11,911 nt of DNA from Octopus sinensis. Lineage: Eukaryota. The notes beneath the pieces were generated by a model, which saw only the letters and a list, made by a program, of their open reading frames with translations, ran no database searches and had not been told where the DNA came from. Of this stretch, positions 1,897 to 10,700 are shown piece after piece. The stretch covers positions 1-11,911 of the forward strand of contig NW_021826776.1 in NCBI RefSeq assembly GCF_006345805.1, given 5' to 3'. The position numbers and the translations under genes were made by a program. Every line of letters starts with the position of its first letter. The stretch's first letter is position 1.

Positions 1897-1912
1897 ATAT
1901 ATAATATATATA

Positions 1913-1944
<32 letters not shown>

Positions 1945-1972
1945 TATTATATATATTATATATATATATATA
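1897..1972. repeat. Imperfect (TA)n microsatellite, left flank of the inverted-duplication structure
   Basis: Read directly. Confidence 0.97.
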
Positions 1973-1974
1973 CA

Positions 1975-2210
1975 ACATTTATAAAAGGCTTAGTAAATAA
2001 ATTACATTGCCACATACTGAACTCATTAAAATAGCAGCTAAAAAATTTTTTTTAAAACTATTTCTAATACTTAAAGAAAATCTCTCTCAGATAGTGTTTG
2101 CTCAAACCAACTCACGAAGGTATGGGGGTAAAGACATTAAAAAATCACAAATGCAAAGGTTATTTGAGAACGTACGTTTCTAGATTAGTCAAATCGACAT
2201 TTCTTTCGTT
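1975..2210 (+). repeat. Inverted-repeat arm A (pairs with 2526-2764)
   Basis: Manual reverse-complement alignment: 2065-2210 is an exact reverse complement of 2526-2671 (146 bp). 1975-2064 matches 2672-2764 with about 8 small differences, mostly 1-bp indels. Confidence 0.97.
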
Positions 2211-2386
2211 AGCTCAGAACTCCTTGATTCGGATTTGGGAACACTGAAAGTGGGAGCATACCCTTTTGGCTTCTTATCACCTCCTGAGATCCGCTCGAAA
2301 CTAACAGTGCTGACAAATTCAAAATATGCAAGCGAAGAATTTCTGCTCTCCCCTTTCCACCAGCGTGGGTTAAAATTGGCAAACAC
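2189..2386 (-). other. Candidate terminal coding exon / open frame (FANFNPRWWKGESRNSS...SELTKEMSI*), unidentified
   Basis: Open frame in GC-richer unique DNA. A possible acceptor (tttctctctgtttaatgcttcggtttttcaccgataaaacatag|TG) lies at its start. No recognisable domain, and overlapping frames on both strands are also open. Confidence 0.2.
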
Positions 2387-2434
2387 TATGTTTTATCGGT
2401 GAAAAACCGAAGCATTAAACAGAGAGAAATGAAT

Positions 2435-2527
2435 TATAATTTCAACAATTGAGGGTAAAATTAATTAATTATTAATCAATTTCACCAAGTATTCAGTATG
2501 TAAAGGGACCATTTAAGGCGAATTCAA
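2435..2527 (+). repeat. Inverted-repeat arm B (pairs with 2771-2861)
   Basis: The reverse complement of 2771-2861 matches with four 1-bp indels and no substitutions. Confidence 0.95.
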
Positions 2528-2764
2528 CGAAAGAAATGTCGATTTGACTAATCTAGAAACGTACGTTCTCAAATAACCTTTGCATTTGTGATTTTTTAAT
2601 GTCTTTACCCCCATACCTTCGTGAGTTGGTTTGAGCAAACACTATCTGAGAGAGATTTTCTTTAAGTATTATAAATAGTTTTAAAAAATTTTTTAGCTGC
2701 TATTTCTAATGAGTTCAGTTATGTGGCAAAGTAATTTATTTTACTAAGCCCTTTTATATAATGT
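2526..2764 (-). repeat. Inverted-repeat arm A' (reverse complement of 1975-2210)
   Basis: See arm A. It overlaps arm B by 2 nt (AA, 2526-2527). Confidence 0.97.
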
Positions 2765-2770
2765 AATATT

Positions 2771-2861
2771 TTGAATTCGCCTTAAATGGTCCTTTACTAC
2801 TGAATACTTGGTGAAAATTGATTAATAATTAATTAATTTTACCCTCAATTGTTGAATTATA
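2771..2861 (-). repeat. Inverted-repeat arm B' (reverse complement of 2435-2527)
   Basis: See arm B. It runs directly into (TA)n. Confidence 0.95.
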
Positions 2862-3095
2862 TATATATATAATATATTATATATATATATATCTAAAAGA
2901 TGAACTTACTTGGAAATGGATGCTTGGCGTCCAATCATATAACATAAATGATATATATATATATATTTTTATGCATATATACATACATTACATACATATA
3001 TAGTACATCTATATAATATATATGTGTGTGGTGTGTGTGTGTTGTGTGTGTGTGTGTGTGTGTATGTGTGTGTGTTTGTGTGTGTGTGTGTGTAT
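2858..3095. repeat. (TA)n 2858-2892, then TA/TACA-rich and (TG)n tracts about 2950-3095
   Basis: Read directly. It explains most of ORF 2935..3150. Confidence 0.93.
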
Positions 3096-3679: not shown

Positions 3680-4734
3680 TTACGAAAGATTGGATCGTTT
3701 GATGAGCATGTGCAGCATCCATGGATATTCTGTCCGTTAACTGGCGTCCAAGTCTTTACTTAGCCGTTGTTCTTGTTTGATGACAATATTTAGATTTATA
3801 TTTTAATGCTGGAATCTCGAAATGGCATTGCAAACAAGAGGTGTCAATCGATCAGAATGTCCATACTAACAAGATGATAACTGCGTTATGGTCCATAAAC
3901 AGCTTTGAAGAAAAAAAAATCAATTCTTTCTTTAAATAAATAACTAAGAAGCATAAGAATCCCATTGTTCTGAGAGAATTCTGACCAAACATAGAAACAC
4001 ACATCTCACTTCTTTCGGAAGCGGTAATAAATGAAATTTATAGGAAATGCGCATTCGAAATAGCTTTGCAATTAGGATTTAGATTAGATGCGCTGAATAA
4101 AATAAGTATAGCATTCTATCAACTGTCAAACCCTCCTGAGATTTTCAAGCTTGCATCTTAAATTGCTAACGACAGGAAATTTCTCAAACAAATTCACCCG
4201 ATTGTTTATTTTAACGTCTAGAGTTCAGCTTCGGCAAATATTTCATGGAATTCTGTAGACGTAAGGAAACAAGCTCCGGCTAAGGACAAATATTGTTAGC
4301 ATTTGGAAAGTTTCTCAGTTTCAAAAGAAGAAACTAAGAAGTCCACACACCAAAAAAGAAAACAAATCCAAAGACAATAGAAAAATAATAAAAAAGGATT
4401 TTGAGCAAAAACAGAAAAAAGAAAATAAGTGCGATTTATTACGTAATTCTGTAGTGTTGGATTTCTTTGAGCATCGCAAGGGTTTTGTTGGAATTGAACA
4501 GTTTCATGGCCAGTTAGCATTTTCATCGGAAAGTTTGTGCAAATATTTGAGGAGAATGGTTTAGTATTGTTGTAAGACGTCTGTGATTTATATTTGCAGC
4601 CTCCTTCTTATGGTATCATAAGATTTTGTGACTGGAAAAAGGCAACGATGATAGATTTAAGAAAATAGAAAGGAAATCATATTACATCAGTAAAGAATGT
4701 TTTAATTGTTCCAGCTTAGATTACTTAGATTAGA

Positions 4735-5832: not shown

Positions 5833-6140
5833 TGTTGTTGTTTGTTCCTTCTCGAGGCACGCCTGGCTCATAAGGGCCAGTTTCCAGGTTTCCTTGGCCT
5901 ATAGGTTCTCCACCTGGACGGAACACCGGTCCGTCACAGGTGAGCTGCAAGATGCAGGAGGAAAGAGTGAGAGAAAGCTGTGGCGAAAGAGTCAGCAGAA
6001 GTTCGCCATTATTTTCTGCCGGAGCCGCGTGGAGCTTAGGCGCTTCGTTCATAAACACACACATCACCCGGTCTGAGATTCGAACCCGCGATCCCTCGAC
6101 CGCGAGTCCGCTGCTCTAACCACTAGGCCATGTGCTTCCA
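5833..6140 (-). mobile_element. Near full-length tRNA-derived SINE (Pol III A/B boxes, V-domain-like core, AAC-type tail)
   Basis: Minus strand: A box TGGCCTAGTGG (6130-6120), B box GGTTCGAATCT (6087-6077), central CACCTGTGACGGACCGGTGTTCCGTCCAGG resembling the V-SINE core, and a 3' tail AACAAACAACAAC. It matches an abundant octopus SINE as I recall it. Confidence 0.9.
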
Positions 6141-10329: not shown

Positions 10330-10493
10330 GATGAACAACTCTGCAGTTTCCGTCTACCAAATTCATTCACAAGTCTGTGGTTGGCCTAGGGCTATAGTAG
10401 AAAACATTTGCCCAAGGTACCATGCAGAGGGACTGAACGTGGAATCATGTGGTTGGGAAGCCAATTTCTCAGTCATATATTCATTCTTGCACT
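10330..10493 (-). mobile_element. tRNA-derived SINE 5' half (head)
   Basis: The minus strand contains CTTCCCAACCACATGATTCCACGTTCAGTCCC...CCTTGGGCAAATGTTTTCTACTATAGCCC...TTTGGTAGACGGAAACTG, with a degenerate B box and the CCTTGGGCAAG-type motif of a recalled octopus SINE head. Confidence 0.8.
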
Positions 10494-10495
10494 TA

Positions 10496-10700
10496 ATATG
10501 TATGTGTGTGTGTGCGTGTGTGTGTATGCTTACATTCGTCGTTAAATCGAGTATTGTGTCCCACTGTGTCTCAAAATTAGCAGTTCATCAAATAGGAATC
10601 TATAAAATAAATGCCAAATTGAAATACGCACTGAGGTCAGTATGATGAATTAAATTTTTGAAGGCGACAGTCGAAAGACTAAACCCAGTAAAATAATATT
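10496..10700 (+). mobile_element. (TG)n spacer plus degraded 3' half of apparently the same SINE family, in the opposite orientation to the head
   Basis: TTAGCAGTTC...ATAAAATAAATGCCA...CACTGAGGTC...AAGGCG...GACTAAACCCAGTAAAA follows the recalled consensus TTAGCGGTTC...ATAGAATAAGTACCA...ACTGGGGTC...AAGGCGG...GACTGAAACAAGTAAAA. Confidence 0.55.

What the first reader, a model, noticed from the sequence alone, without database searches (positions are those of the whole stretch)
1975..2861. Interleaved double inverted duplication (A-U-B-A'-B'): a ~900-bp pseudoknot-topology structure between two (TA)n tracts
Seen: A (1975-2210) pairs with A' (2526-2764), including 146 bp of perfect complementarity. 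B (2435-2527) pairs with B' (2771-2861). The order A,B,A',B' is crossed rather than nested, so this is not a simple foldback, MITE or TIR element; there are no real TIRs or TSD. Established: long perfect dsRNA is the ADAR substrate, coleoid cephalopods have unusually extensive A-to-I editing, and multi-step template switching (FoSTeS/MMBIR) produces such inverted duplications. Inference: if real and transcribed, the RNA would form two competing long helices around the unique segment U. It could act as a locally generated editing or siRNA substrate, or as a structural switch.
Basis: partly seen in the sequence, partly recalled or inferred. Interest (0 to 1): 0.75.

Follow-up and report, generated by a model that had tools for sequence, protein, structure and literature searches.

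The report
Crossed inverted duplication in octopus repeat DNA
The interleaved inverted repeats are really in the sequence, but they sit in a common octopus repeat next to (TA)n tracts and look like a very recent local copying accident (or an assembly error), not a purpose-built RNA switch.

Summary
A 1975-2210 pairs with A' 2526-2764, including a 146-nt perfect block. B 2435-2527 pairs with B' 2771-2861. The order is crossed and (TA)n tracts lie on both sides.

New evidence changes the interpretation:
- The window is octopod DNA.
- The tail of A', the 6-nt linker and B' (2677-2861) form one copy of a dispersed, (TA)n-flanked repeat unit. It is also present, colinear, in an Octopus vulgaris chromosome. 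The first 40 nt of B occur at another locus. So the A'|B' junction is native, not a breakpoint.
- The two copies differ by 2 substitutions and 10 indels. Six other octopus inverted repeats show 70 substitutions to 5 indels. The arms are therefore essentially undiverged: very young, or partly sequencing error.
- As RNA, A:A' (-355 kcal/mol) dominates B:B' (-124 kcal/mol). The two helices cannot coexist, so there is no pseudoknot.
- Long inverted repeats are common in octopus DNA, about one per 14 kb in the sample.

Best reading (0.45): a recent local inverted duplication, by a switch-and-return template switch, on a repeat that already carried one inverted repeat. Rivals are two family copies that inserted side by side or nested, and an assembly artefact. 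There is no evidence of function.

The parts
1897..1972 (.). Left (TA)n tract (T1), directly upstream of A
   Evidence: TRF reports period 2 and 40.5 copies. Sequence read.
1975..2064 (+). Segment f, the first 90 nt of arm A. It is homologous to the dispersed repeat unit and carries 8 of the 12 difference events between the copies.
   Evidence: An nhmmer profile of the family unit hits 1979-2051 with E = 3e-9.
2065..2210 (+). Segment c, the inner 146 nt of arm A. It is perfectly complementary to 2526-2671. No significant relative was found outside the window.
   Evidence: No hit in 81 kb of O. vulgaris. The resemblance to L001 is not significant (z = 1.9).
2211..2434 (.). Segment U, a 224-nt single-copy stretch (GC 0.42) between A and B. 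Its origin is unknown.
   Evidence: No copy in the window and none in the four O. vulgaris loci. It is not a SINE fragment. There are no Pfam hits in four open frames. The one protein hit, P0001, is a low-complexity repeat protein. Exact-word scans of the viral, metagenome and prokaryote collections found nothing.
2435..2527 (+). Arm B (b, inner copy). Its first 40 nt are 100% identical to a fragment embedded in (TA)n in O. vulgaris locus L004.
   Evidence: The L004 match starts exactly at 2435.
2526..2764 (-). Arm A', the reverse complement of A. Positions 2526-2671 are c' (perfect block). Positions 2672-2764 are f'.
2765..2770 (.). 6-nt linker AATATT between A' and B'. It is part of the native repeat unit, not filler.
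   Evidence: The alignment with L001 runs colinearly through it. A junction-centred test gives z = 4.9.
2771..2861 (-). Arm B', the reverse complement of B. Its outer end abuts the right (TA)n tract.
2677..2861 (-). One contiguous native copy of the dispersed repeat unit (b + linker + f).
   Evidence: 88% identity over 150 aligned columns with L001 3057-3236, which comes from O. vulgaris OX597827.1. z = 17 against dinucleotide shuffles. nhmmer E = 2.5e-45. The L001 copy is flanked by (TA)n on both sides.
2858..2892 (.). Right (TA)n tract (T2)
   Evidence: TRF reports period 2 and 18.5 copies.

Best explanation
The block is repeat DNA in an octopus genome, not a dedicated device.

Its right end (tail of A' + AATATT + B', 2677-2861, abutting (TA)n) is an ordinary copy of a dispersed, (TA)n-associated repeat unit. 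The crossed layout arose when a very recent local event copied a nearby stretch in reverse complement. One arm of the new inverted repeat landed inside the loop of an inverted repeat already present.

The simplest such event is one switch-and-return template switch during replication or break repair. These are classes 1-4-3-2 / 3-2-1-4 of the four-point model. There are two equivalent versions:
- B was copied from B' into the loop of a pre-existing A-U-A' hairpin.
- A was copied from A' to the far side of U, next to a pre-existing B-A'-B' unit.
Either version needs only two new junctions.

The self-complementary (TA)n tracts and the hairpin-prone arms are the likely triggers. That step is inferred.

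If the region is transcribed, the RNA folds into one 236-bp A:A' hairpin. This would be a generic ADAR or Dicer substrate of a kind very common in octopus. B:B' forms only in transcripts that lack A.
For: - Octopod origin is shown.
- The family unit and the native A'|B' junction are shown.
- The four-point model says classes 1-4-3-2 / 3-2-1-4 create an inverted repeat and are the commonest repeat-creating class. [quoted passage not shown]
- There is a 2-nt overlap (AA) at the B|A' junction.
- c and U have no relative outside the window, so the c/c' duplication looks local rather than transposed.
- The copies are essentially undiverged: 2 substitutions and 10 indel events. Six other octopus inverted repeats show 70 substitutions and 5 indels (Fisher p = 4e-8).
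Against: - Which arm is new cannot be decided.
- The copied stretch (91-236 nt) is much longer than the tens of bases documented for the four-point model.
- The copied stretch ends exactly at the edges of the other repeat. This needs a structure-guided switch, or it points to a mobile element.
- U is unexplained.
- The 12 differences are not spread evenly. There is a 164-nt difference-free stretch (P = 0.003). No single-event model predicts this unless the differences are errors or slippage near (TA)n.
- Only one external copy spans the A'|B' junction.
- No reads were available, so the structure itself is not independently confirmed.
Confidence: 0.45

Rival explanations
1. Two young copies of the same mobile repeat family landed head-to-head or one inside the other, like the maize 'double Ds'. 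(TA)n-associated truncation then removed parts. No local copying was involved.
For: - With 2211-2772 removed, A joins B' into a 325-bp unit. It aligns colinearly, with no gap at the join, to the reverse complement of 2435-2764.
- TT is present on both sides of that insert.
- The family has other near-identical fragments: 40 nt at 100% in L004.
- Family copies are cut off by (TA)n at different internal points in L001 and L004.
- O. vulgaris has recently active TA-targeting Tc1-Mariner, TIR and MITE families (PMC13282606).
- B/B' form 91-nt terminal inverted repeats around 2435-2861, with TA at both extremes.
Against: - The self-nested parse makes A'|B' an insertion boundary, yet that boundary is the family's native layout in L001.
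- There is only one B' for two A-type segments.
- The insert would have to carry the 224-nt U, which has no other copy.
- c has no significant relative in the family copy.
- The ends of the joined unit have no terminal inverted repeat (p = 0.14).
- No external copy has both B-type arms.
Confidence: 0.2
2. The crossed layout, or part of it, is an assembly or long-read artefact between two (TA)n tracts. Causes could be a chimeric read, a mis-join, or a collapsed or expanded repeat.
For: - The differences between the copies are indel-dominated at 10:2, unlike real octopus inverted repeats at 5:70.
- 7 of the 10 indels lie in homopolymer runs.
- In 8 of the 10, the copy next to a (TA)n tract is the shorter one (P = 0.055).
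- All differences lie within about 90 nt of T1 or T2.
- The available O. vulgaris reference is an ONT R9.4.1 / NextDenovo assembly polished with Hypo (PMC10700109). I do not know whether the window comes from it.
- Whole-genome amplification and library chimeras are known to give inverted artefacts in long reads (10.1101/173872, listed).
Against: - The usual long-read artefacts are simple palindromes, not crossed pairs with a unique 224-nt spacer.
- The right-hand part is a bona fide family copy in native layout.
- At the sites where the copies differ, both carry states shared with family relatives: inner 6, outer 3. So not all differences are errors in one copy.
- Residual consensus errors do not by themselves make the structure false.
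Confidence: 0.2
3. The block is a selected RNA element. It would be a locally encoded editing or siRNA trigger, or a structural switch between the A:A' and B:B' helices.
For: A perfect 146-bp and overall 236-bp intramolecular duplex is an excellent ADAR or Dicer substrate in principle. Transcripts that start inside U would instead form B:B' (-209 kcal/mol for U-B-A'-B').
Against: - No conservation can be shown. c and U are single-locus.
- The arms are undiverged, so there has been no time for selection to act.
- There are no compensatory changes to count.
- The helices are not balanced, at -355 against -124 kcal/mol.
- No Rfam family matches 1975-2861.
- Similar inverted repeats are abundant in octopus DNA (PMC5625713).
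Confidence: 0.03

Closest known systems
Switch-and-return template-switch mutations (four-point model, Loytynoja and Goldman 2017, PMC5453318)
   Same: A stretch is copied in reverse complement from nearby sequence and synthesis then returns. Classes 1-4-3-2 / 3-2-1-4 create an inverted repeat. [quoted passage not shown] There is a short overlap (AA) at one junction.
   Different: The documented events are tens of bases long, whereas here 91-236 nt (or 330 nt) were copied. A 224-nt unique segment lies between the arms. The ancestral sequence is unknown, so the event cannot be reconstructed. The pure 3-1-4-2 parse conflicts with the native A'|B' junction.
FoSTeS / MMBIR complex rearrangements (my own knowledge; mentioned in PMC5453318)
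   Same: Multiple template switches with microhomology give inverted duplications with inserted segments from elsewhere. That could account for U.
   Different: Those events are usually kilobases to megabases and are defined from patient or parent comparisons. Here the scale is sub-kilobase and no parental allele is available.
Maize 'double Ds': one transposon copy inserted, inverted, into another copy of itself (my own knowledge; no paper retrieved)
   Same: It has the same crossed order of half-elements (A, B, A', B'). The joined outer halves are colinear with the inner copy.
   Different: There is an extra 224-nt U and no terminal inverted repeats on the joined unit. The boundary that should be an insertion edge is native in a family relative.
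MITE / foldback-type hairpin repeats of octopus genomes
   Same: They are short and AT-rich, with long inverted arms, TA-rich flanks and multiple genomic copies. Six comparable hairpin repeats occur in 81 kb of O. vulgaris.
   Different: Those repeats are simple nested hairpins with 5-15% arm divergence, mostly substitutions. This one is crossed and essentially undiverged.
Inverted-repeat dsRNA substrates of ADAR hyper-editing (Porath et al. 2017, PMC5625713)
   Same: A long near-perfect intramolecular duplex made from repeats in non-coding DNA of an octopus.
   Different: Editing and transcription are untested here. Nothing sets this locus apart from the very many others.

Membership tests
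Template-switch mutation (four-point model) | The inserted fragment is an exact reverse complement of nearby sequence. | tested here: met
   A/A' are identical in 232 of 234 aligned columns and B/B' in 90 of 90.
Template-switch mutation (four-point model) | One switch-and-return on a known ancestral or sister sequence explains the whole change. | not testable with these tools
   No orthologous or allelic sequence is available. No DNA search of eukaryote genomes is on hand.
Template-switch mutation (four-point model) | Short range and short copied fragment (tens of bases). | tested here: not met
   The copied fragment would be 91, 236 or 330 nt, against the scale described in PMC5453318.
TIR transposon / MITE | Terminal inverted repeats at the ends of the element. 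| tested here: inconclusive
   The whole block and the joined A+B' unit have none (p = 0.14). The sub-block 2435-2861 has 91-nt inverted ends, B/B'.
TIR transposon / MITE | Target-site duplication. | tested here: inconclusive
   TA lies at 2435-2436 and 2860-2861, and TT at 2209-2210 and 2771-2772. In DNA this AT-rich, next to (TA)n, neither is diagnostic.
TIR transposon / MITE | Multiple dispersed copies with the same ends. | tested here: inconclusive
   L001 holds one 180-nt copy and L004 one 40-nt fragment. Both share the outer end of B next to (TA)n. No copy with both arms occurs in 81 kb.
Self-nested transposon ('double Ds' type) | The outer halves join into a unit colinear with the inner, inverted copy. 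| tested here: met
   325 nt against 330 nt, with no gap at the join.
Self-nested transposon ('double Ds' type) | Both edges of the inner copy are insertion boundaries that are absent from other family members. | tested here: not met
   The A'|linker|B' edge is colinear with the family copy in L001.
H-type RNA pseudoknot | Both helices can form at the same time in one chain. | tested here: not met
   There are 0 nt between B and A' and 6 nt between A' and B'. Those would have to bridge a 236-bp helix. This is inferred from A-form geometry. The MFE and centroid structures use A:A' only.
ADAR hyper-editing substrate | Long near-perfect intramolecular dsRNA. | tested here: met
   The A:A' duplex is -354.6 kcal/mol with 146 bp perfect.
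ADAR hyper-editing substrate | The region is transcribed and shows clustered A-to-G RNA-DNA differences. | not testable with these tools
   No RNA-seq data are accessible.
Long-read assembly artefact | No independent reads span the junctions, or read depth is abnormal. | not testable with these tools
   No reads are accessible. The indel-rich difference profile fits consensus errors but does not prove a false structure.

The most novel reading that the evidence does not exclude
The locus is real and transcribed, and it works as a start-site- or strand-dependent two-state dsRNA source.
- Transcripts that include A give a 236-bp A:A' duplex.
- Transcripts that begin inside U, or antisense transcripts in which the B-type helix is made first, give a 91-bp B:B' duplex with A' looped out.
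One locus would then feed different ADAR or small-RNA outputs.

A less exotic version: the (TA)n-associated family regularly generates crossed inverted repeats by self-templated strand switching, and this copy was caught almost mutation-free.
Probability: 0.04. Interest if true: 0.55.

Novelty: new member of a known kind. Interest (0 to 1): 0.2.

Why it matters
If the structure is real, this is a clean and nearly mutation-free example of a sub-kilobase inverted duplication that lands inside another inverted repeat, next to (TA)n tracts, in an octopus germline. It would illustrate how long dsRNA-forming hairpins are born in a genome already rich in them. Those hairpins are the raw material of the heavy non-coding A-to-I editing seen in cephalopods.

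It also warns against reading crossed repeats as designed RNA topology. The two helices here cannot coexist.

If the structure is an artefact, it flags (TA)n-flanked repeats as weak spots in long-read octopus assemblies. Either way it is of modest interest.

Tried and rejected
- **Exact-word scans.** A, B and U were scanned against viral, metagenome and prokaryote contigs. There were no hits. This was expected for animal DNA and is not informative.
- **Protein probes for other copies.**
  - The A-derived ORF found nothing. It has no ATG, so this is uninformative.
  - The 72-aa ORF of U gave only a low-complexity repeat protein, which I rejected.
  - Pfam gave nothing on four U frames and six other ORFs.
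- **Independent assemblies.** Look-ups of six window ORFs, three of them spanning junctions, found nothing on record.
- **U as a fragment of the abundant octopus SINE.** Local alignments looked suggestive, but shuffles gave z = 1.5 and a SINE profile found nothing in U. Rejected.
- **Homology of c with L001 beyond its internal (TA)n.** z = 1.9. Not accepted.
- **L004 1780-1880 as a diverged B-like copy followed by a homologous hairpin.** The B-like match is marginal (z = 2.3) and the 144-nt repeat arms are unrelated to A (z = -1.0). Not used.
- **Pure 'A+B' unit split by an inverted copy of itself' (class 3-1-4-2, or double Ds).** This was my first reading. I dropped it as the sole explanation once A'|B' proved native.
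- **Single inversions of any block set.** None gives a simpler ancestor. This was worked by hand from the block order.
- **Terminal inverted repeats of the joined unit.** Not significant.
- **Which copy is ancestral, judged from family states.** The tally was 6 to 3. Not decisive.

Full report
**Observation**

- A (1975-2210) aligns with the reverse complement of A' (2526-2764). 232 of 234 aligned columns are identical, with six small indels.
- B (2435-2527) aligns with the reverse complement of B' (2771-2861). All 90 aligned columns are identical, with four one-base indels.
- The perfect stretch is 2065-2210 against 2526-2671, 146 nt. The repeat finder reports 169 nt at 98%.
- B and A' overlap by two bases, and six bases (AATATT) separate A' from B'.
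- Tandem Repeats Finder places (TA)n tracts at 1897-1972 and 2858-2892.
- The fold z-scores are -52 and -33 against dinucleotide shuffles.
- No comparable non-microsatellite inverted repeat occurs elsewhere in the window.
- No further copy of A, B or U occurs in the window.

**Context**

The window is AT-rich, packed with microsatellites and has no convincing coding sequence. It has no Rfam family at gathering score and no tRNA.

A tRNA-like SINE lies at 5835-6140 on the minus strand. Translating it gave an ORF that hits three 'Hypothetical predicted protein [Octopus vulgaris]' entries. I fetched those loci and one more, 81 kb of GCA_951406725.2 in all. They carry the same SINE at 85-90% identity over 306 nt.

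**The key new result**

In locus L001 (OX597827.1) a unit of about 180 nt is flanked on both sides by (TA)n. It aligns colinearly with the window's minus strand from the right (TA)n tract through B', the 6-nt linker and the first ~88 nt of A'.
- With the (TA)n excluded, identity is 88% over 150 aligned columns, z = 17 against dinucleotide shuffles.
- A 71-nt piece centred on the A'|B' boundary still aligns straight through it, z = 4.9.
- A profile of the unit finds only these places.

In locus L004 (OX597836.1) the first 40 nt of B occur at 100% identity, again embedded in (TA)n. That match starts exactly at window position 2435.

Three conclusions follow.
- B and the outer 90 nt of A belong to a dispersed repeat family tied to (TA)n tracts.
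- The A'|B' boundary is the native layout of that family, not a rearrangement junction.
- Copies of the family are cut off by (TA)n at various internal points.

The inner 146 nt of A (segment c) and the 224-nt U have no significant relative in the 81-kb sample.

**Parsing the layout**

With 2211-2772 removed, A joins B' into a 325-nt unit. It is colinear with the reverse complement of 2435-2764, with no gap at the join. That first suggested a unit split by an inverted copy of itself. This is the maize 'double Ds' layout, or class 3-1-4-2 of the four-point template-switch model, which 'creates two inverted repeats' (PMC5453318).

The native A'|B' junction argues against this as the whole story. 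That parse makes A'|B' a new junction.

Two parses keep A'|B' native and need only two new junctions:
- A pre-existing hairpin A-U-A' followed by B', into whose loop a reverse-complement copy of B' was written (class 1-4-3-2).
- A pre-existing unit B-A'-B' with 91-nt inverted ends, whose interior was copied in reverse complement to the far side of U (class 3-2-1-4).

In the paper these two classes are mirror images and are the commonest repeat-creating class. In both parses the crossing arises simply because one arm of the new repeat lies in the loop of the old one. I could not decide between them. The copied stretch is far longer than the events documented in that paper.

**Age and quality of the copies**

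The two copies differ by 2 substitutions and 10 indel events.
- Seven of the indels lie in homopolymer runs.
- In eight of the ten, the copy adjacent to a (TA)n tract is the shorter one.

Six other inverted repeats, with 81-219-nt arms, occur in the O. vulgaris sample. They differ by 70 substitutions and 5 indels. Fisher p = 4e-8. The window's arms therefore carry almost no ordinary divergence.

The differences are also unevenly placed. All lie in the family-derived, most AT-rich parts within about 90 nt of the (TA)n tracts. That leaves 164 nt without any difference (P = 0.003), although that stretch has as many homopolymer runs as the rest.

This pattern fits two explanations: residual long-read consensus errors near (TA)n, or slippage-prone synthesis. 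The O. vulgaris reference is an ONT R9.4.1 assembly polished with Hypo (PMC10700109). I do not know whether the window comes from it. At the differing sites, family relatives agree with the inner copy six times and with the outer copy three times. So neither copy is simply the faulty one.

**RNA behaviour**

- The A:A' duplex is worth -354.6 kcal/mol and B:B' -124.2 kcal/mol.
- The minimum-energy and centroid folds of either strand use A:A' only.
- B:B' appears only when A is made unavailable (-209.4 against -428.7 kcal/mol).

A true pseudoknot is excluded by geometry. The 3' end of B abuts the inner end of helix A:A'. The 5' end of B' lies six bases from the outer end of that helix, about 66 nm away for 236 bp of A-form helix. 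This is an inference from standard helix dimensions.

**How ordinary is it?**

Six non-microsatellite inverted repeats with arms of 80 nt or more occur in 81 kb of octopus DNA, about one per 14 kb. Porath et al. report that octopus has an exceptionally high fraction of loci able to form long near-perfect dsRNA. They also report over a million hyper-editing sites, mostly in repeats (PMC5625713). About 66% of the O. vulgaris genome is repeats, including recently active TA-targeting DNA transposon families (PMC13282606).

A long hairpin here is thus routine. Only the crossing and the freshness stand out.

**Verdict**

| Reading | Probability |
|---|---|
| Very recent local inverted duplication on a copy of a (TA)n-associated repeat, with no dedicated function | 0.45 |
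| Two young family copies inserted side by side or nested, with (TA)n truncation | 0.2 |
| Assembly artefact | 0.2 |
| Selected RNA element | 0.03 |

Read support, genome-wide copy number, the orthologous locus and expression could not be examined with the tools at hand. These are the decisive tests.

Noticed in passing
window 5835-6140 (minus strand): A tRNA-like SINE with box A/B-like motifs near 6070-6135. It matches copies in three O. vulgaris loci at 85-90% over 306 nt. Its translated ORF matches annotated 'hypothetical proteins' of O. vulgaris, which are therefore probably SINE-derived mis-annotations. ARAGORN and Rfam do not call it.
   Followed up: partly
window 10343-10695: A copy of the abundant octopus SINE whose 5' part (profile positions 18-145) lies on the minus strand at 10343-10470. 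Its 3' part (177-390) lies on the plus strand at 10497-10695, and about 31 profile positions are missing at the join. This is a 5'-inverted layout like LINE 'twin priming', and a second local inversion in the same window.
   Followed up: no
L004 1888-2213, L004 322-577, L002 9119-9712, L001 16034-16334, L001 17402-17686, L001 1938-2024 / 4224-4310: Six non-microsatellite inverted repeats with 81-230-nt arms at 85-95% identity occur in 81 kb of O. vulgaris. Five are hairpin-type with spacers under 410 nt, and the sixth has a 2.2-kb spacer. Differences between their arms are almost all substitutions. They are probably MITE or foldback families. I did not classify them.
   Followed up: partly
L001 3287-3665 and L004 1381-1790: In two of nine copies of the abundant SINE, a B-like sequence follows within about 60 nt of the SINE 3' end, in the same orientation. 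This may be chance, or the (TA)n-associated unit may prefer SINE tails.
   Followed up: partly
window 2977-3065: Sub-threshold Rfam hits to mir-3149, mir-568 and mir-1277 (34.6 bits at best, against gathering scores of 75-100). They fall on the (AT)n/(TG)n microsatellite and are compositional.
   Followed up: no
window 2452-2484 (inside B) and 2815-2846 (inside B'): B contains its own imperfect palindrome of about 33 nt (GGTAAAATTAATTAATTATTAATCAATTTCACC). It folds locally when B is unpaired.
   Followed up: no
L001 6022-8739: A 905-aa single-exon gene with many C2H2 zinc-finger repeats is listed with no Pfam family on record. It is probably one of the expanded octopus ZNF genes.
   Followed up: no
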